Program-made: the position numbers and the translations under genes
Shown here: one piece after another, positions 39,142-47,378 of the stretch
Numbering within the stretch: position 1 is the first letter of the stretch
How the letters are laid out: each line of letters opens with the position of its first letter
The notes under the pieces: model-generated
What the model saw: only the letters and a program-made list of their open reading frames with translations
Database searches by the model: none
Told to the model about the DNA's origin: nothing
DNA from: Laetmonice hystrix
Taxonomy: Eukaryota
Direction of reading: 5' to 3'
Length of the DNA stretch: 64,000 nucleotides
Assembly: GCA_965235115.1 (NCBI GenBank)
Contig: OZ249447.1
Coordinates: 24,862,001 to 24,926,000 of the forward strand

Positions 39142-39932
39142 CCTCGTAATAATGTGATACTTACTGAGAGACATAGATCACATATATGCCTACAGTCTGT
39201 CCTATACTCCTCACCTTGTTGACAATACTATTACCCCAGTTTGTACCTAATACATCACACTTGTACTATCTACTACTTCCTCAATTACTGTTGGTACTAG
39301 TTTTCCCTATGAGATACTAATGAGATTCTAATGCATGTCCGATATAAAAAGTGAACGTCCTTGCATTCATCTGGAACATCCTCACCCATTTCTGTCAATT
39401 ATACCTCCGGACGAAACATGTATAAATACTATATCTTTGGGGAAATGTGGCTGAAGAACTTTACCCCCTCCCCCTTTCGTAAACAGTCCAATTATCTTTA
39501 AAATTAAATGGATCTATGCGTCAGCCCATGTATTAACATATTCGTAACATTTCACATCAATTTGATACATTTTGTATTTGACATGCAGGCCTCATCAAAT
39601 CAGGCTTCATCTTTGGAGAACTATTCAAGGTGCCAGTAAAAAAAAATTCAGTGAAATACCTGCTAGACCTGTGCGTGTCGAGATTGGGCTCAACAATTTG
39701 GCACATTCTTTTGCCGAATGTGTGAAATATTTTAATTGTGGTGGCAAAAGGACCCAGGTCTGAGCGGCTTACCATGTATCTGAACCTTAGAGTAGACCCC
39801 GTCCAAAAACAAAACTACCCAGTGGGTGGGAGTCACGTACGTGATCTATTTTCACGAAGTGACGTTTCTTTTTCTTTTCTCCGTGCGTTTTTCCCAGATC
39901 GCCGGGACGCCCGTTCCCCTGTGGGGGTGGGG

Positions 39933-42443
39933 CTACGCTGTATCCCATTCATTTAGATGGGTATTAATTCTTATTAGGTTTTTTGCTGCCTTATGCACTA
40001 TGTTCTTGTCTTTCGAGAATATTTGCGAGATCAGGGTTTTTGTCTCATCGTCTTTGTGTATTCCTGGGCATGTTTCCATAAGGTGTTGTTGTGTTTCATC
40101 TTCTTGGCCACACCCCCTACATTGTAGGTTATTATATTTGTTTTTATAGTTTCCTTTGGCCTTTATCATCCTTGTTCTTGCCATGAATATTGCACTTGCC
40201 TGATTCCTTGTTAGTTCCTGTAGGTATGTCGGTGTTCTTTTTCCATCTTCCTTGTTTGTTGTTAGGAATATATACTTAGATTTGTTTCTCCCGTCATTCT
40301 TCATTTTCTCCTCCATTTGTTGTTTCGCCATTCTCCTTATTGTCTCTTTCCTTTGGTGTATCCCCATTGTTTGGAGGTTTGATATATCCATGCTCATCTG
40401 TTCTGCCAGTTGTCTGGTTCTTTGGTTCCATGATTTAGTGTTGTTGTCTTGGGTTATTTGTCTCATGCTTTTCAGGTTATTTCCTTGTAGTTTGGTGGCA
40501 TAGTTAATTTTTTTTGTGGCTATTATGTGTTCAATGTCAAGGAGTTTGGTTTCTTCGTATATGCATTCTCTTGGGGTGGATTGGGGTATTCTTAGGAGTC
40601 TTTTTATTATGTTGTCGAGGATTGTATTCAGTTTTTTCATTTGGGTTCGGTTTATGGTCCATGTTTCAGCTCCATATGTTATTATCGGGATTATGCATGT
40701 TTTCACTAGTGTCCATATGGTTTCCATCTCTATTCCTTTGAAGTTGTCGTCTTCTGCTATCTGTAGGATGGTTTGTAGTGCTGCTTCAGTTTTTCTTTCT
40801 GTCTCTTGGATGTGGTCGTCTATGTTGTTTTTATTGTTAATAGTCTCTCCCAGGTACTTGTATTTATTTGTTGGTTCTATGGTAACGTCCCCTATTGTTA
40901 GTATATTGTCGTGGTTTCCCTTACCTATGGTCATGGTTTTTGATTTTTCTTTTCCGAATTCTATTCTCAGGTCACTCGCCACTCTGTTTGTTATTGCTAG
41001 TAGTCTCTTTTGGTCATCCATGTTGTTTGTTATTAGGACTACATCATCTACCCACAGGAGGCAGATTGAGTTCTTGTCGATGCTGGTTTCCTGGAGTTCT
41101 TTGGCTTTCATTATTTCCTTGTTGATTTCATCCATGAGTGTGGCGTATTGGGTGACCGCTAGGACTCCACCTTGTCTTATGCTATCTCTTATTTTTATGG
41201 GTCTGGTGTTGCCGTGGGATGTTCTTATTGTAGCTGTTAGGTTATTGTTGAGTTTATCTATTAGGTTCCAGGTGGCTCCTGTGCATCCTTGTTTGTGGAG
41301 TATGAACATGATGGCATCGATCCATGCCTTATCGTATGCTTTGGTCACATCTAGGAATGTTATGTAGGTATTTTTGTTGCAATTTTTGTTTTGTCTTATT
41401 ATTTCTTTTATTCTTAGGATGTGGTCCGTGGTGCTCATCCCTTTTCTCCCTCCTGCTTGTTCGTCTGTTATTTTTATGGTTTTTAGGATTCTGTTGTTTA
41501 TCAGTCTCTCATATGTTTTTCCTATGTTACTTGACAGGGTTATACCTCTTTCATTGCTGCATTTTCCTTTGACTCCTTTTCCTTTATACATTCTAATGAC
41601 TTCTCCCTCTAGCCATTGGGTTGGGATTTCCTTGGTTTCCGAGATGTGGTTGAGTGCTGCTAGGTATATTTTCCTTGTTCTCTTGTTAGCATTTATGAGC
41701 ACTGTGTTTGGTATGTTATCTGGTCCATTGGCCTTTTGTTTTTTGAGTTTTTTAATGACTGTGTTCAGCTCTTCGCTAGTGAATGGTTCCATTTGGTCCT
41801 GTTGTGTGGTTTGTCTTAGTTTGTTGACCGTTGCTTGTATGTTTTTTGAGCTTTCTTCGTTTTCTGGTTTTCCTTCTCTTGCTTGGTACAGTTGTTCGTA
41901 GTAGTTAGCTATGTGGTTCTTTTTCTCCTGGGGGTTGGTTATCTCTACTCCTTGTTCGTTTCGGAGGTATTTGTCTATGTTATCTTCCTTTTTTAGGATT
42001 TTCTTCCTTGTTTTCCAGAAATCTTTGGACTTCGACCCTCCTTGGAGTACAAGGTTTTTCATTTTTATCCTTGTTGTTATCTCTAGGTTCGCTTGAATTC
42101 TGTTTCTTAGGTTTTTCTGTGCTCTTATGTAGTTGTCCTGTTTCTGTTCTATTTGGGGGTTAGGCTGTTTTGTTTTGATGGCCTTTTCGTACTCTTGTCT
42201 TGTTTTTCGTTTTTCTTCTCTTAAGTTCTTGGTTTGTCTGTCTTCTTTTTTTCTCCCTTTTCCTCTTATGGTTATTGTTCCTATATTTCTTTTTAGGCTT
42301 TCTTTTATTGTGGTCTCTAGGGTGCTGTAGCTAGTTTTCACCCTCTCTAGGTTTTTTGTAATATCATTGTTGAATTTTCTCCATGCTTCTTTGTTACCTG
42401 GTGCCCATATTTTTGTGTTTTTGTTTGGTTTTTCCGATGGCAC
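39933..42443 (-). CDS. LINE ORF2, RT portion plus C-terminal CCHC knuckle
   Basis: KANGPDNIPN, RGITLSSNIGK, FLDVTKAYD, IRQGGVLA, LLWVDDVV, YKYLG; C-terminal CRGC..ETQQHLMETC. Confidence 0.93.
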   Translation of the reverse strand: MPSEKPNKNTKIWAPGNKEAWRKFNNDITKNLERVKTSYSTLETTIKESLKRNIGTITIRGKGRKKEDRQTKNLREEKRKTRQEYEKAIKTKQPNPQIEQKQDNYIRAQKNLRNRIQANLEITTRIKMKNLVLQGGSKSKDFWKTRKKILKKEDNIDKYLRNEQGVEITNPQEKKNHIANYYEQLYQAREGKPENEESSKNIQATVNKLRQTTQQDQMEPFTSEELNTVIKKLKKQKANGPDNIPNTVLINANKRTRKIYLAALNHISETKEIPTQWLEGEVIRMYKGKGVKGKCSNERGITLSSNIGKTYERLINNRILKTIKITDEQAGGRKGMSTTDHILRIKEIIRQNKNCNKNTYITFLDVTKAYDKAWIDAIMFILHKQGCTGATWNLIDKLNNNLTATIRTSHGNTRPIKIRDSIRQGGVLAVTQYATLMDEINKEIMKAKELQETSIDKNSICLLWVDDVVLITNNMDDQKRLLAITNRVASDLRIEFGKEKSKTMTIGKGNHDNILTIGDVTIEPTNKYKYLGETINNKNNIDDHIQETERKTEAALQTILQIAEDDNFKGIEMETIWTLVKTCIIPIITYGAETWTINRTQMKKLNTILDNIIKRLLRIPQSTPRECIYEETKLLDIEHIIATKKINYATKLQGNNLKSMRQITQDNNTKSWNQRTRQLAEQMSMDISNLQTMGIHQRKETIRRMAKQQMEEKMKNDGRNKSKYIFLTTNKEDGKRTPTYLQELTRNQASAIFMARTRMIKAKGNYKNKYNNLQCRGCGQEDETQQHLMETCPGIHKDDETKTLISQIFSKDKNIVHKAAKNLIRINTHLNEWDTA

Positions 42444-42445
42444 AG

Positions 42446-43370
42446 CTTAGGTTGAGGGTAATGGTATTATGGTCCGTCTCTTTCTTCCCTTTCAGGGTGT
42501 AGATATTGTGGGTATGTATGGTGGTATCCGTTACCCTTTGTGCCATCCCTTCGTTGCATAAGATATAGTCAATTATTGAATGTTCTGAGTTCTTGTTTCT
42601 ATTTTGGCGTGTCCAGTTTATGTTGTGCGGTTCTGTGTTCAGGACTTTCATGGCTGTTGCTTCAATGATGTTTGTTAGTAGTTTTCCATTCCTGCTTTCA
42701 TCTTGTGTGTATGGTGGTATATCTGTTTTTATCTTTGCGTTAAAGTCTCCTATGAGTATGACGTCTCCTTGTTGTTTTAGTTCCGTGATTGTGGTTCCTA
42801 TTTCATAGTATTCCCTGCTTACTGTCTCCTTGTCTATTTTTTCTTGGGGTCCATAGTAGGCTCCGAGGTATGTTGGCTTGTTCTTTGTTTTGATCTTTAT
42901 CCATATGATTTCGTGGTGGTTATGTTTTGGGAGGTCTAGTTCTTGTGAGTTTTGGAAGGTTTCTTGGTCGATTAGTATCCCTATTCCTCCTCCGCTTTTT
43001 TCTTTTCTTGGTTTGTGGTACCATTGGTATCCTTCTATGTTTGGTGGTTTCTTGGTTTTTGTTTCTGCTATGATGGCTATGTTGGTTTCGTGGGTTCTTA
43101 GGGTTGCTTCTAGGCTGGCTTTTTTCCCTGTGATTCCATTTGCATTGGTATATAGTATTTTGATGGGTTTATTTTGGGTATTCCGATATTTTCTTTTCCT
43201 GGGGCTGTGTTTTCTTTTGTTTTTTTGTAGGGGGTGGCCTTCCTCCTATCTCCTGTGGTATCTGTCTGGTGATTGATTTCTGGGTCTTTTTTCTCTGGGC
43301 TCTGGGTTTTGCTCGTATCTTTGTTTGTTTGTTGTCCTTCCCTGTCTTTCTTCGTCTTCCCTCTGTTCCA
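42446..43370 (-). CDS. LINE ORF2, APE endonuclease portion (out of frame with RT, no initiator AUG)
   Basis: Hand translation is open throughout: ILYTNANG, IAET, SGGGIGIL, GAYYGP, IGDFNA, WTR, IIDYIL, TDH. Confidence 0.88.
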
Positions 43371-44952
43371 CTATTTTCATTATTTCGTGTATTGTTTGGT
43401 CTACATTTTCCGTTGTTGTTCCTGTTACTTTCATTGTCTCTGAGTCGTTGTCGTAGGCTGCCATGGTTTTGTTTCTGCTTGTTATTGTGTGTATTGTTTT
43501 CCCTCCTCTCCCTAGTACGTGTTTCACGATATTCCTGTTGATCTTTGTTTCTGCCGCACATTTTGTTTTTGTGGATATTTCGAGGTGTTCTGTGCTCGGG
43601 GTTTTTGGGTTTTTGGGTTTTTGGGTTCTTTCATCTGTTTTTTGTTCGTCGAGTAGTGCTTCAATCATTTCTGTCAGATTTTGGGCTGTTGCTTCCGCAG
43701 TCTCCTCTGTTATGTGGTATCCATCTTTCTCCAGTTTTGTGTTTCTTGGGTAGGGGTCGATTACTTTTTTGTTTTCCTCTCTTAGGTATTTTGGGAACAT
43801 GTTTCTTTCGATTTCTCTGGATGGTGTTGCGAATCTTGGGGGTTTTATGAATATCATTTTGTGAGGAGGTAGGTTCTTTGTGGCTCTTGTCAGTTGTCTT
43901 GTCGTTTCTTTCGCTGTCTCTCCGTGTCTGATGTGGTTCGTCCCTATGTGCATCATTATGATGTCGTGGTCCTCTATCTCTTGGGTGTTGTCATCTAGTG
44001 TCTCTTGGAGTTGTTGGGTAGTATATGTTGTTTTTATGTGGGTTTCGGTGGTTTCGGTGTCTTCTATGTATCTTGAGATCTTGGTCAGGTTTGAGTCACC
44101 GAGGATGACTACTTTGCTCTTTTTGGGTATTTTGTCTTTTTTTATGGTTTCTTTTTGGGTTTTCATTTTTTCTTCTATCAGCTGGTCAATTACCTCATCT
44201 TTGTGTCCCAGGGTTTCGTAGGCTTCTTCGTTTTCTTTCGTCAGGATTCTGATTTTCTCTTTGTCTTTTGCTGCTTCAAGTTTTAGTTGGGTTATCGTTT
44301 TTTCGTGTTCGTCAATTTGTTCCAGGGCGTTTTCTAGTTGGTCTATGGCATTCAGTGACTGTTCCTGTAGTTCTTCTTGTTTGTTTATAAGTTCTGTTAT
44401 TTTTGCGTTGGCGTTTCTTGCCTCCTGGGTTGTCTTTTGTTCGTCTCTGGCACTTTCTCTTTTGAGTTGGTTTTTTTCTTTTTCTGTTTCTGTTAGTTTT
44501 GATTTTAGGCTTTTGTTTAGGGCTTCCATTTCCTTCTTTGTTCGATTCGCTTCTATTTCCGTTTCTTTGATTTTCTCGTTGAGTTTTTTGTTTTGGGTTT
44601 CTGTCAGGTCACAGTTTTTGCACTTTTTATTTGTTTCCTTGCTGGTGTCTTTATCCTCTTTCCCCATCGCAAGTTTTTTGTAGCTTCCGTCTTTTTTCCT
44701 GGCAGACTCCCTCATTGGTCTGCTTGTGGTTGGGGTTAGGTCCTGTTGTGGTTGGGTTTTCGTGTTTTTTGGTTTTGTTGTTTGGGTGTTTTGGGGGGTT
44801 CTTGTCTGTGATTCCTCGCTATCTGTAGTTGATGATTCATCGTCCGTGTTTATTTTGCCTTTCGTTTGTATGTCGATTTCAATGTCAGAGGCTGACGTAT
44901 CGGGTTTTTCTTGTTTTTTTGGGTTTTTGGGGTCTTCTTGGTCTTGTTCCAT
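43246..44952 (-). CDS. LINE ORF1: coiled coil + SGNH/GDSL esterase + KH-like domain, 568 aa
   Basis: Heptad-rich region at about aa 110-265; VILGDSN, HIGTN and DGYH esterase blocks; C-terminal IVKHVLGRGGKTIHTI...MKVTG....VDQTIHEI KH pattern. Confidence 0.88.
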   Translation of the reverse strand: MEQDQEDPKNPKKQEKPDTSASDIEIDIQTKGKINTDDESSTTDSEESQTRTPQNTQTTKPKNTKTQPQQDLTPTTSRPMRESARKKDGSYKKLAMGKEDKDTSKETNKKCKNCDLTETQNKKLNEKIKETEIEANRTKKEMEALNKSLKSKLTETEKEKNQLKRESARDEQKTTQEARNANAKITELINKQEELQEQSLNAIDQLENALEQIDEHEKTITQLKLEAAKDKEKIRILTKENEEAYETLGHKDEVIDQLIEEKMKTQKETIKKDKIPKKSKVVILGDSNLTKISRYIEDTETTETHIKTTYTTQQLQETLDDNTQEIEDHDIIMMHIGTNHIRHGETAKETTRQLTRATKNLPPHKMIFIKPPRFATPSREIERNMFPKYLREENKKVIDPYPRNTKLEKDGYHITEETAEATAQNLTEMIEALLDEQKTDERTQKPKNPKTPSTEHLEISTKTKCAAETKINRNIVKHVLGRGGKTIHTITSRNKTMAAYDNDSETMKVTGTTTENVDQTIHEIMKIVEQREDEERQGRTTNKQRYEQNPEPREKRPRNQSPDRYHRR

Positions 44953-47378
44953 GTTGGTGTTGGGTCCGTTTGTCCGTCTCGTGGTCGGTGGGCGATATTG
45001 GAGGTCGTCAGGTGGTCGTGCTGGGTCGCTAGTTTTCCTTTGTTTGTTTTTGGGTTGTTTATTTATTTTTTTTTTTTTTTTTTTGGTGCTGTATTGTTTA
45101 TCGTCTTATTATGTGTCTTTGTTCCACTTATCTGCTTTGTTCCTGCCTTTGGTCTCCTTTTCTGTCGGTTTTCCCTTCTGGCTCGGGGCTTTTGCTTGTT
45201 GCATCCGCCATTTGCATTCTCTGTCGTGGATGTTTAAAATGCAAGGTTCATGTGATAAGATAAAGAAAACATAACCCAGAATAGCTATATTTGTACTTTC
45301 GATATCATCATAACGAGTCAAGGAGATCATTTTTCCCCTCCATAATTCCAAGTCGACCTGACGTGTGATGTAAAACACATGACCACAACAGATGTTGGGC
45401 AGGTTACAACGGTGCCTAAGTACTGAGCCAAATTATCGCCACCTTACATACCACACCCACTCTAACATCCAACTTACCACACACACGTGAGACCGTCTGG
45501 TCTATCAGGTTCATGTATGAAGTTATCAAGACAACCATGTGTCTCTACCCAGCAAACTGAGGCCGCCTTGGCTACTCTGGGTTGCCGCAACAAAGGTCTG
45601 GTTTGGTCCTTACAATAGTCAATGCTCATTGTTCTTAGGATTACCCTGAAGCAGGGTTACTCAGTGCATTAATCCAATCAGTCTGGGGCTGTTGGGTTTT
45701 TTTTCATCTAGATCTATGATACTCAGGTGTAGTACAATTATCAAATCCATGTCATACATGTCAACTGATATCACTGACTTAAATGCATCAACCTGGCCAG
45801 ATGCAGCCCAAGTTTAAACGATTATTGTTTGATTGTTTAAAACAAGATCAATAACGAATTTTCGACATCGGTGTTCAGTGTAGAAAAAAATAGTCCATTG
45901 TACATAAGTCTAGCTAGATACTGACTTTACTAACAGGGATGCCAGGGTGTTCTATTCATAAGTACTGCCAATGTGTTACTCAATGTAGCAATAAACGGAA
46001 GTTAAGACTGAAGTACCAAGAGTTCATGAATAGTAAATGTCTCTGCCATCATCATAATCATGAACATGAAACCGATTTCATTGGATTTCTAGGTCATAAA
46101 ATTGGTTCACGACCCATATGTCACCCATAGGACTACCTGTAAGTCGGTCTGACTGACTCAGTAACTGCGCATCATTGTGAACATGACAGACAATGTACGG
46201 TATTGCTCTCATATTGTTCTTCCCAAAGTAGACATGAACTGTAAGTGAATGGTAGCCATGACGTTGACTCATCATCTCATTCTTTCTTCTTTACTTTTAG
46301 CTTGAGTTTGAAACAAGTAGAATTACATATGAATAAAATATGAAGAGTGAATAAAATAAACAAATCATAATCAGAGGTCGCACAAACTATATGCAAACAT
46401 TTCTTCATAAGAATTCAGAATTTAACTCAAAACATCTCAAAGAATAATAAATTAATAATAATTGCATCCATAATCACTCATACCAGTTAAAATGCTTGTT
46501 TTGAAGTTCATAATTTGGCCATGATTATTAAATTATAATGCACAGTTGGAATGGTTGATTTACATGGATAAATACCGTAGTTCTCTAGACATGCATGGTA
46601 TCATTAATTACAACTTATGATCAAGTCTCATTTTAAGAGCAAATTGAACTCATGAAAATAAAAGATAATCAGCACATGTGAGTGACAGATTATAGCCTGA
46701 TAACAATGGGTTACTATATGTTTAAATCAATTATCAAATCAGAGTATCTCAAGGATTGACAAGAACTAATGCCACTTAAAACCTTTTCAGTTTTGATGTC
46801 TCAGATCTTGGCTCTCTCAACAAGGTCAGGTATGGTTTAGTTCTGGGATAATTCCTGGGTAGCTGGGTTATAAACCCATAGGAAAACCATCACTCACATG
46901 ATGGATTCATGATCAGTAGCTCCCCAACAGTACAGTAGTACCAATTAACTCTGAAATCCATCCAAGCCCTCCTGGAGGTCCTACACTACAGGCCTCTTTG
47001 AAGGAGACCCCCCCCCCCCTGCGAAAACCTGTAAGGCAACACCCCAAAGTTTTCTGGCCTTCATTTTTCAAAATGCCTTCCTATTACTTTAAAGTTTACC
47101 TTACCCCTAATTTTCCAAGTTCTTCTCCCCCCCTAAAAAAAGGAAAATGAGGTGAAATATCCCCAGGGTAGTATCACTATCAGTACTTATGGCCATGACA
47201 TTTGGGTAGGCCTATTACACGTAATAATATTCCAAGTCCTTATGGGATAATGTGCTTTATCAGATCTACTCTGAACCCAAGCCTGGGACTCGGCTAGGCT
47301 GGTATAGTTGATTCAGTGACCAGAGATTAGTCTTATTTTTAGTACTTACTCAGCTACTGACAGTACTATTACTAACTA

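What the first reader, a model, noticed from the sequence alone, without database searches (positions are those of the whole stretch)
43246..44952. LINE ORF1 with an apparent KH RNA-binding domain fused to an SGNH esterase
Seen: after a coiled coil and an esterase with Ser, Asp and His intact (GDSN, GTN, DGYH; about 44115-43680), the segment at about 43560-43370 reads CAAETKINRNIVKHVLGRGGKTIHTITSRNKTMAAYDNDSETMKVTGTTTENVDQTIHEIMKIVE. This matches the type I KH layout: beta1, helix, GxxG loop, helix, two strands, final helix. Known: described ORF1 nucleic-acid modules are RRM, CCHC knuckles and PHD, and esterase ORF1s occur in CR1, L2 and RTEX elements; I do not recall KH being described in ORF1. 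Inference: a possibly undescribed ORF1 architecture in which a captured KH domain supplies the RNA binding that esterase-only ORF1s lack. The N-terminal RPMRESARKK motif and a CxxC may add chromatin or Zn binding.
Basis: partly seen in the sequence, partly recalled or inferred. Interest (0 to 1): 0.8.

Follow-up and report, generated by a model that had tools for sequence, protein, structure and literature searches.

The report
LINE ORF1 with esterase plus KH
A young jumping-gene (LINE) family in this animal genome makes a first protein that joins a lipid-type esterase to a genuine KH RNA-binding domain, a combination that the literature on esterase-type LINE proteins said did not exist.

Summary

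**What is there**
- Window 43246-44952 (minus strand) is an intact 568-aa ORF1 of a 5.36-kb non-LTR retrotransposon (window 45222-39865).
- ORF1 reads: N-terminal low-complexity region, coiled-coil-like stretch, SGNH/GDSL esterase (aa ~278-445), disordered linker, type I KH domain (aa ~465-535), basic tail.

**Evidence for the KH domain**
- Pfam KH_1 scores above its gathering cut-off.
- A family profile hits solved KH domains at E 1e-16.
- The AlphaFold model (pLDDT 90-93) has beta-alpha-alpha-beta-beta-alpha topology, and its 50 best PDB matches are all KH domains.

**It is not a one-off**
- The genome holds about 7 copies that are 98-100% identical, plus diverged subfamilies.
- At least 40 protein clusters from at least 7 other samples share esterase+KH, each one checked lying upstream of an EN+RT ORF2.
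- dN/dS on the KH is 0.06-0.09.
- Most relatives add a CCCH zinc finger after the KH.

**Novelty**
- Schneider et al. 2013 stated that no esterase ORF1p carries a structured RNA-binding domain.
- I found no paper describing KH in an ORF1. Repbase could not be checked.

**Side finding and limits**
- In 9 of 9 lineages ORF1 and ORF2 share one frame, split by a single UAG in known leaky-stop contexts. This suggests Gag-Pol-like readthrough.
- The RT clade (RTEX-like by ORF1 layout) and expression remain untested.
- Earlier scan notes held nothing on this.

The parts
39865..45222 (-). Whole non-LTR retrotransposon copy (5358 bp)
   Evidence: blastn against four sister copies gives 99.4-99.5% identity over exactly this span. 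The junctions are shown.
44953..45222 (-). 5' UTR
   Evidence: Shared with sister copies up to the common 5' end, which begins AGAGAATGCAAATGG.
43246..44952 (-). ORF1, 568 aa, intact, ending in TAG (43246-43248)
44692..44721 (-). RPMRESARKK motif (aa 78-87)
   Evidence: Found only in the window family and L010, with a loose match in P0051. It has no domain hit.
44611..44622 (-). CxxC (CKNC, aa 111-114) at the start of the helical region
   Evidence: Kept in the window family, L010 and P0001 only. Function unknown.
44143..44610 (-). Coiled-coil-like region (aa 115-270)
   Evidence: No Pro, one Gly, rich in E/K/Q/L. Heptad periodicity is weakly above shuffles (p 0.06 overall, 0.015 for aa 190-270). 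Relatives give weak hits to coiled-coil Pfam families.
43618..44121 (-). SGNH/GDSL esterase domain (aa ~278-445), with Ser287, Asn339, Asp410 and His413
   Evidence: AF2 pLDDT about 97. Foldseek and VIA place it with GDSL hydrolases at Z 16.5. Catalytic residues are conserved in 36-38 of 38 relatives.
43561..43617 (-). Disordered, variable linker (aa 446-464)
   Evidence: pLDDT 57-58. Its length varies widely in alignment A3.
43348..43560 (-). Type I KH domain (aa 465-535); GxxG loop GRGG at 43501-43512
   Evidence: dN/dS is 0.06-0.09.
43249..43347 (-). Basic C-terminal tail (aa 536-568; 11 K+R, no Cys)
   Evidence: In most relatives this position holds a CCCH zinc finger.
42397..43245 (-). 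ORF2 first part (spacer plus AP-endonuclease), open in the same frame as ORF1 directly after the TAG
   Evidence: The EN domain is called by Pfam in the sister copy L033.
39936..42446 (-). ORF2 second part (reverse transcriptase plus a C-terminal CX2CX8HX4C motif), in a different frame in this copy
   Evidence: RVT_1 at 7e-24. This copy changes frame at about 42446-42397, whereas sisters L033, L034 and L035 have one open frame of 1104 codons.
39865..39935 (-). ORF2 stop codon (39933-39935), 3' UTR, and a short variable (GAAAA/GAAA)n tail

Best explanation
This is the ORF1 protein of a young, multi-copy non-LTR retrotransposon family whose ORF1 layout resembles the RTEX type. The protein is modular: a long coiled-coil-like region (multimerisation, inferred), an SGNH esterase with an intact Ser/Asn/Asp-His active site (probably active, probably membrane or lipid directed as shown for ZfL2-1, inferred), a flexible linker, and a canonical type I KH domain with an intact G-[KR]-x-G loop. 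The KH domain, helped by the basic tail, most likely binds single-stranded RNA and lets ORF1p coat the element's own transcript to form the retrotransposition RNP. In most relatives a CCCH zinc finger follows the KH and would add to this binding. That gives this esterase-type ORF1p the structured RNA-binding module that the CR1/L2-type esterase ORF1ps lack. Shown here: the domains, their fold, their conservation and purifying selection, and their constant position upstream of EN+RT. Inferred: RNA binding, esterase activity, multimerisation and RNP formation.
For: KH identity: Pfam KH_1 is above its cut-off in the window copy and hits 38 of 38 relatives. The family profile matches solved KH domains at 9e-17. 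Long proteins each hit profile positions 195-260 in 5-10 separate stretches, the pattern expected of multi-KH proteins such as vigilin; I did not check their identity. The AF2 models have beta-alpha-alpha-beta-beta-alpha topology. All 50 top Foldseek matches are KH domains, several solved with RNA or ssDNA. Functional loop: the first Gly is kept in 37/38, K/R in 33/38, and G/A at position 4 in 35/38. Selection: KH dN/dS is 0.07, 0.09 and 0.06 against subfamilies L012, L018 and L017. Esterase. LINE context: an EN+RT ORF2 lies directly downstream in the window family and in 8 other lineages. Family-wide second RNA-binding module: zf-CCCH scores above its cut-off in P0018, P0080, P0093 and P0137, and 18 of 25 full-length relatives have exactly 3 Cys in the tail. 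Literature gap: esterase ORF1ps were reported to lack any structured RNA-binding domain, and how they bind RNA was left open (PMC3905857).
Against: No binding, enzymatic or expression data exist; no RNA-seq run was found for this organism. KH domains can bind ssDNA as well as RNA. The SGNH block II glycine is not conserved in this family (alignment A3). The transposon-specific His of ZfL2-1 (H191) is present in the window copy but in only 9 of 38 relatives, so esterase behaviour may differ from ZfL2-1. This particular copy has a frame change in ORF2 and is not autonomous. The RT clade could not be determined.
Confidence: 0.8

Rival explanations
1. The KH domain binds single-stranded DNA rather than packaging RNA. 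For example, it might bind the nicked target strand or the first-strand cDNA during target-primed reverse transcription.
For: Some of the closest structural and profile matches are ssDNA-binding KH domains (FBP KH3/4 with FUSE ssDNA, hnRNP K KH3 with ssDNA). If ORF1 and ORF2 are fused by readthrough, the KH would be carried to the integration site.
Against: Most matches are RNA binders (Nova, IMP, MEX-3C, PNPase, vigilin). Most relatives pair the KH with a CCCH finger, a typical ssRNA module. The ORF1ps studied so far act on RNA.
Confidence: 0.1
2. The KH fold is kept as a structural or protein-interaction module, for instance to recruit host factors, and does not bind nucleic acid.
For: Some KH domains have lost nucleic-acid binding. 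A few family members have degenerate loops (RKNE, GKGK).
Against: The G-[KR]-x-G loop is conserved in about 90% of members, and the domain is under strong purifying selection.
Confidence: 0.06
3. The architecture is real but not new. Curated RTEX-type (or other) Repbase or Dfam entries already carry KH (+CCCH) after the esterase, and it was simply overlooked or never written up.
For: Automatic Pfam hits to KH_1 are already stored for some of these proteins. RTEX ORF1ps have the same long coiled coil and late esterase layout. The family is widespread.
Against: Schneider et al. screened all RepBase esterase ORF1ps and reported no RNA-binding domain. Five full-text searches and five targeted paper look-ups found no mention.
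Confidence: 0.25
4. The resemblance to KH is a chance match in an A-rich, low-complexity ORF.
For: The single-sequence Pfam score is only just above the cut-off.
Against: Profile, fold, conservation and selection evidence all agree.
Confidence: 0.01

Closest known systems
Esterase-type (type IV) ORF1p of CR1/L2 elements, e.g. zebrafish ZfL2-1 ORF1p (PDB 4c1a, 4c1b; Schneider et al. 2013, PMC3905857)
   Same: ORF1 lies upstream of an EN+RT ORF2. A coiled-coil region precedes an SGNH esterase with a conserved active site. The window copy has the His that corresponds to ZfL2-1 H191.
   Different: ZfL2-1 and CR1 types have a short coiled coil and an arginine-rich motif, and they end with the esterase. 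Here the coiled coil is long, there is no ARM at that position, and a linker, a KH domain and a basic tail (CCCH in relatives) follow the esterase. The H191 equivalent is not family-wide (9 of 38).
RTEX-clade ORF1ps (RTEX-n_NV, _BF, _SK in Schneider et al. Table S1)
   Same: A long N-terminal region, a coiled coil of about 110-160 aa, no ARM, and an esterase of about 170 aa starting far into the protein.
   Different: They were reported to have no RNA-binding domain. Whether they really lack KH, and whether the ORF2 here belongs to the RTEX RT clade, could not be tested.
Type I KH domains of cellular RNA-binding proteins (FBP/KSRP, IMP1-3, Nova, hnRNP K, MEX-3C, vigilin, PNPase)
   Same: The same beta-alpha-alpha-beta-beta-alpha fold, GxxG loop and profile.
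   Different: There is a single copy, it is fused to an esterase, and a transposon encodes it. No specific donor family was identified.
Jockey-like (RRM+CCHC) and L1-like (coiled coil+RRM+CTD) ORF1ps
   Same: The likely role is the same: a multimeric protein that coats the element's RNA.
   Different: The RNA-binding modules differ: KH (+CCCH) instead of RRM, CCHC or CTD.
Gammaretrovirus and epsilonretrovirus gag-pro-pol UAG readthrough (MoMLV UAG-GGA; WDSV UAG-GAU; PMC13517186)
   Same: A single in-frame UAG followed by G separates the nucleic-acid-binding protein from the enzyme ORF.
   Different: No conserved downstream pseudoknot or hairpin was found. Readthrough itself has not been demonstrated.

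Membership tests
Type I KH domain (Pfam PF00013) | Profile score at or above the Pfam gathering threshold | tested here: met
   21.9 bits (whole ORF) and 25.0 bits (piece) against 21.5. 38 of 38 relatives hit, best E 2.9e-15.
Type I KH domain (Pfam PF00013) | beta1-alpha1-alpha2-beta2-beta'-alpha3 topology | tested here: met
   DSSP on the AF2 models gives E191-196, H199-206, H208-219, E222-227, E232-237, H240-260.
Type I KH domain (Pfam PF00013) | GxxG loop between alpha1 and alpha2 | tested here: met
   GRGG at aa 481-484. In the family, G1 is kept in 37/38, K/R in 33/38, and G/A at position 4 in 35/38.
Type I KH domain (Pfam PF00013) | Structural similarity to solved KH domains | tested here: met
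   The 50 top Foldseek PDB matches are all KH domains, TM 0.64-0.87, mostly 0.75-0.87.
Type I KH domain (Pfam PF00013) | Binds single-stranded nucleic acid | not testable with these tools
   Needs EMSA or anisotropy measurements with a loop mutant as control.
SGNH/GDSL hydrolase | Block I Ser, block III Asn, block V Asp-x-x-His | tested here: met
   Ser287, Asn339, Asp410 and His413. Family counts are 36/36, 38/38, 37/38 and 37/38.
SGNH/GDSL hydrolase | Block II Gly | tested here: not met
   Alignment A3 has no conserved Gly between blocks I and III; the consensus there is W..x..Y-T..L. The fold and the other blocks are intact, so this is a variant, not an exclusion.
SGNH/GDSL hydrolase | Three-layer alpha/beta/alpha fold | tested here: met
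   Foldseek E 1.4e-6. VIA Z 16.5, rmsd 2.4 A over 155 residues.
SGNH/GDSL hydrolase | Hydrolytic activity | not testable with these tools
   Needs an enzyme assay.
Transposon-encoded esterase ORF1p (Schneider et al. 2013) | Encoded as ORF1 upstream of EN+RT in a non-LTR element | tested here: met
   The window family and 8 other lineages.
Transposon-encoded esterase ORF1p (Schneider et al. 2013) | Esterase preceded by a coiled coil | tested here: inconclusive
   The region is Pro-free and rich in E/K/Q/L. The heptad signal is weak (p 0.06 overall, 0.015 for aa 190-270). No dedicated predictor was available.
Transposon-encoded esterase ORF1p (Schneider et al. 2013) | Transposon-specific buried His/Ser pair (ZfL2-1 H191/S228) | tested here: inconclusive
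   The His equivalent (H335, two residues before G-T-N) is present in the window copy but in only 9 of 38 relatives. The Ser equivalent could not be placed with confidence.
Transposon-encoded esterase ORF1p (Schneider et al. 2013) | No structured RNA-binding domain (stated as a class property) | tested here: not met
   A KH domain is present, and a CCCH finger in most relatives. This is the point of difference.
RTEX clade of non-LTR retrotransposons | Placement of the RT domain within the RTEX clade | not testable with these tools
   No named reference RTs were available. RT relatives are unnamed. The best PDB hit is human L1 ORF2p at 5.7e-19, ahead of R2.
RTEX clade of non-LTR retrotransposons | ORF1 layout: long coiled coil, no ARM, late esterase | tested here: met
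   Compared with Table S1 of PMC3905857.

The most novel reading that the evidence does not exclude
This LINE lineage has rebuilt a retrovirus-like Gag/Gag-Pol strategy from different parts. ORF1p (coiled coil, esterase, KH, with or without CCCH) would be the abundant RNA-coating protein. A programmed readthrough of the single in-frame UAG (contexts UAG-GAN, and UAG-CAA-UCA in one lineage) would occasionally produce an ORF1-EN-RT fusion. That fusion would tether the enzyme covalently to the RNA-binding module and so enforce cis-preference.
Probability: 0.45. Interest if true: 0.75.

Novelty: new variant of a known kind. Interest (0 to 1): 0.64.

Why it matters
Esterase-type ORF1 proteins are one of the three main architectural classes of LINE ORF1p. 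They are the only class for which no RNA-binding domain is known. The structural study that defined the class concluded that the combination of an esterase with an RNA-binding domain 'never occurred' or brings no advantage, and it left open how such proteins form RNPs (PMC3905857).

A widespread invertebrate lineage with esterase + KH (+ CCCH), under purifying selection and recently active, shows that the combination does occur and is maintained. It provides a natural system in which to separate the lipid/esterase role from the RNA-binding role of ORF1p. It also adds KH and CCCH to the list of modules that LINEs have recruited for RNA binding.

The conserved in-frame UAG, if it is read through, would be a mode of ORF2 expression different from the termination-reinitiation mechanisms described for SART1 and L1.

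Tried and rejected
- **Chance KH match:** rejected.
- **Segment unique to this copy:** rejected.
- **Host KH gene mis-joined to a LINE:** rejected. Nine lineages keep the same order upstream of EN+RT.
- **MLV-like downstream structure after the UAG:** not found. RNAalifold gave 0 pairs, and single-sequence z-scores were +0.6 to +1.2.
- **RT clade assignment:** failed. Source names were all blank, Atlas clusters were unnamed, and PDB contains only L1 and R2 RTs.
- **Host taxonomy:** organism names are coded. The only hint is that the best Atlas cluster is commonest in Annelida.
- **Accession searches** for GCA_013332695, JAAUYH and ERZ25767047 in papers found nothing.
- **The Kapitonov 2009 RTEX paper** is not held.
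- **RNA evidence:** no RNA run was found.
- **Atlas search** with a KH+CCCH relative gave nothing useful.
- **Target-site duplications** were looked for by eye at five copies and not resolved.
- **The OCR of Schneider's Figure S1** is corrupted, so I used it only to locate the H-x-G-x-N motif.
- **Complex prediction** was not used, because no protein-protein binding claim is made.
- **Earlier scan notes** near this place concern unrelated FGD genes, and a word search returned nothing.
Full report
**1. The observation**

Window 43246-44952 on the minus strand is an uninterrupted 568-codon ORF from ATG to TAG.

Downstream on the same strand lie an AP-endonuclease-like stretch and a reverse transcriptase (RVT_1, E 7e-24). 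blastn against four sister copies fetched from the same genome defines the element as window 45222-39865, 5358 bp. Identity is 99.4-99.5%, and the element ends in a short, variable (GAAAA/GAAA)n tail.

**2. Is the KH domain real?**

- **Single sequence.** Pfam KH_1 gives 21.9 bits on the whole ORF and 25.0 bits on the cut piece, against a gathering score of 21.5. phmmer against PDB lists only KH domains among its five best hits: four PNPase KH entries and TDRKH.
- **Family profile search.** A three-sequence profile of the esterase-to-KH region was run exhaustively against 1.84 billion representatives and found 564 proteins at E<=1e-3. Dozens match the whole profile in one stretch. Long proteins match only positions ~195-260, 5-10 times each, which is what multi-KH proteins such as vigilin would do.
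- **38-sequence alignment (18-39% identity to the window).** It keeps the I-P-x5-H-x-I-G-K-x-G ... V-x-I ... I-x-G ... A-x2-I pattern.
  - Every one of the 38 members hits KH_1 on its own, best E 2.9e-15.
  - The profile hits solved KH domains at 9e-17 (FBP), followed by KSRP, IMP1/3, Nova, hnRNP K, MEX-3C and vigilin.
- **Structure.**
  - AlphaFold2 on the alignment gives mean pLDDT 93.5. It shows an alpha/beta domain, a disordered linker, and then beta-alpha-alpha-beta-beta-alpha.
  - The KH-only model has pLDDT 90.4.
  - Its 50 best Foldseek PDB matches are all KH domains, with TM 0.64-0.87 (mostly 0.75-0.87) and rmsd mostly 1.1-1.7 A. Several were solved with RNA or ssDNA.

I consider the KH assignment settled.

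**3. The esterase**

- The N-terminal half of the model matches GDSL/SGNH hydrolases only (PAF-AH, TesA/TAP, acetyl esterases), at Foldseek E 1e-6 and VIA Z 16.5 over 155 residues.
- Catalytic residues are conserved: Ser 36/36, block III Asn 38/38, Asp 37/38, His 37/38.
- The block II glycine is not conserved in this family.
- The His that Schneider et al. call transposon-specific (ZfL2-1 H191, two residues before G-x-N) is present in the window copy (H335) but in only 9 of 38 relatives.

**4. Not a one-off, and always a LINE ORF1**

- **Same genome** (627 Mb, 35 contigs). There are seven ORF1 copies at 98-100% identity (six uninterrupted, one with an internal stop), plus diverged subfamilies. 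L010 is an intact 574-aa ORF at 38% identity with the same GDSN/GTNH/DGIH/GKEG motifs. L012, L017, L018, L021, L025 and L029 also cover the KH region.
- **Other samples.** Relatives come from at least seven other samples: five ENA assemblies, one Logan run and one NCBI assembly. In every locus inspected (L031, L036, L037, L038/L039, L040, L041 and the P0002 place), the esterase+KH ORF is followed directly by an ORF with Exo_endo_phos and RVT_1.
- **Apparent exceptions.** Three members that looked esterase-only in the search table (P0043, P0137, P0101) also carry KH_1.
- **Selection on the KH codons.** Between subfamilies, dN/dS is 0.07 against L012 (dS 0.72, 69 codons), 0.09 against L018 and 0.06 against L017.

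**5. The wider architecture**

- In 18 of 25 full-length relatives the tail after the KH has exactly three Cys.
- Pfam calls a C-x8-C-x5-C-x3-H zinc finger there. It scores above the gathering threshold in P0018 (26.6 bits), P0080 (25.4), P0093 (25.7) and P0137 (20.8), against 20.5.
- So the family norm is coiled coil + esterase + KH + CCCH.
- The window's sub-lineage (window, L010, P0001, P0002, P0011, P0023, P0081) has a Cys-free basic tail instead.
- The coiled coil is plausible from composition, but my periodicity test supports it only weakly.

**6. Mechanism**

- **Shown:** domain identities, folds, intact active-site and loop residues, selection, and the position in the element.
- **Inferred:** ORF1p multimerises through the helical region. 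The esterase acts on or docks to lipids, as shown for ZfL2-1 (PMC3905857). The KH, with the basic tail or CCCH finger, binds the element's single-stranded RNA to build the RNP.
- **Rivals:** ssDNA binding at the integration site, or a non-nucleic-acid role for the KH. Both are less likely, given the conserved G-[KR]-x-G loop and the CCCH partner.

**7. Comparison with what is known**

- Schneider et al. [quoted passage not shown] They suggested that such a combination 'never occurred' or bears no advantage, and proposed arginine-rich peptides instead.
- Metcalfe and Casane 2014, the 2026 survey of CR1-group elements, Arkhipova's bdelloid study and a 2024 gastropod survey do not mention KH.
- Full-text searches combining KH with ORF1, LINE, RTEX or esterase found nothing relevant.
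- Table S1 of Schneider et al. shows that RTEX ORF1ps share the layout seen here: a long coiled coil, no ARM, and a late esterase. The family is therefore RTEX-like by ORF1.
- I could not place the RT in a clade, and I could not inspect Repbase.
- Automatic Pfam labels for KH already sit on some of these predicted proteins. The novelty is therefore one of description, not of data availability.

**8. State of this copy**

- ORF1 is intact.
- ORF2 changes frame at about window 42446-42397, so the EN part (open 43245-42397) and the RT part (42446-39936) are in different frames.
- Sister copies L033, L034 and L035 have a single open frame of 1104 codons.
- I built no consensus and repaired nothing.

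**9. Side finding: the ORF1-ORF2 junction**

- In the window family ORF1 ends ...R-R-TAG, and the ORF2 frame opens at the very next codon in the same frame.
- The same holds at every junction examined, in nine lineages. The stop is a single in-frame TAG, and no other stop follows for as far as I read (283 to over 490 codons).
- The spacer before the endonuclease varies from about 27 to over 110 codons. The frame stays open even though the sequence is A-rich.
- The first in-frame Met lies 28-339 codons downstream, and at about codon 190-340 in five of the eight junctions read. In four of those five the printed translations show it to be beyond the start of the endonuclease.
- Seven of the eight junctions read have UAG-GA-N. 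One of them is UAG-GAU, which the review PMC13517186 lists as a type III leaky context and as the WDSV gag-pro junction.
- The eighth, L041, has UAG-CAA-UCA, which fits the type I consensus UAG-CAR-YYA (the consensus is from established knowledge).
- No conserved downstream structure was found.
- Frame conservation would not be needed for termination-reinitiation, the mechanism described for SART1 and L1. Programmed readthrough giving an ORF1-ORF2 fusion is therefore a reasonable but untested reading.

**10. Verdict**

- This is a new variant of a known kind: an esterase-type ORF1p that carries a KH, and usually also a CCCH, RNA-binding module. It contradicts a published generalisation and bears directly on the open question of how esterase ORF1ps bind RNA.
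- Expression, binding, esterase activity, readthrough and RT clade remain to be tested.

Noticed in passing
window 43246-43248 and the codons after it; also L010:3178, L031:10140, L036:2830, L037:7177, L038:2432, L040:2916, L041:2373: ORF1 and ORF2 are in the same frame, separated by a single TAG, in 9 of 9 lineages. Seven of the eight junctions read have UAG-GA-N and one has UAG-CAA-UCA. The first in-frame Met lies far downstream. This suggests programmed stop-codon readthrough. No conserved RNA structure follows the stop.
   Followed up: partly
P0018 aa 598-619, P0080 aa 861-883, P0093 aa 665-685, P0137 aa 726-744 (loci L038, L041): Most relatives carry a CCCH zinc finger right after the KH domain. 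The window's sub-lineage has replaced it with a Cys-free basic tail.
   Followed up: partly
window ~42446-42397: This copy's ORF2 changes reading frame between the endonuclease and the RT. Three sister copies keep one open frame of 1104 codons. In L032 an indel in or near the end of ORF1 puts the ORF2 frame out of register with ORF1.
   Followed up: yes
alignment A3, between SGNH blocks I and III (window aa ~300-315): The family lacks the conserved block II glycine of SGNH hydrolases and has a W...Y-T...L pattern there instead. Five of 38 members also hit the Oskar OSK domain model.
   Followed up: no
L033, 5' junction: This sister copy has a short duplication of the element's first ~20 bases at its 5' end (GCAAATGGCGGATGCAACAAGC is repeated).
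   Followed up: no
window 39936-40130 (ORF2 C-terminus): There is a CX2CX8HX4C motif near the end of ORF2, with a weak hit to Pfam zf-RVT (E 0.02). It may help place the clade.
   Followed up: no
window 43169-43561 (-), 42878-43276 (+) and other overlapping ORFs: Several ORFs of 80-280 aa overlap the element in other frames and on the other strand. They look like by-products of the strongly A-rich coding strand, not genes.
   Followed up: no
L017:2019-2735 (-) and L037:11754-12664: Fragments of other retroelements (an RNase H-like ORF; gag-asp protease and RT_RNaseH_2) lie next to diverged copies, which indicates nested repeat clusters.
   Followed up: no
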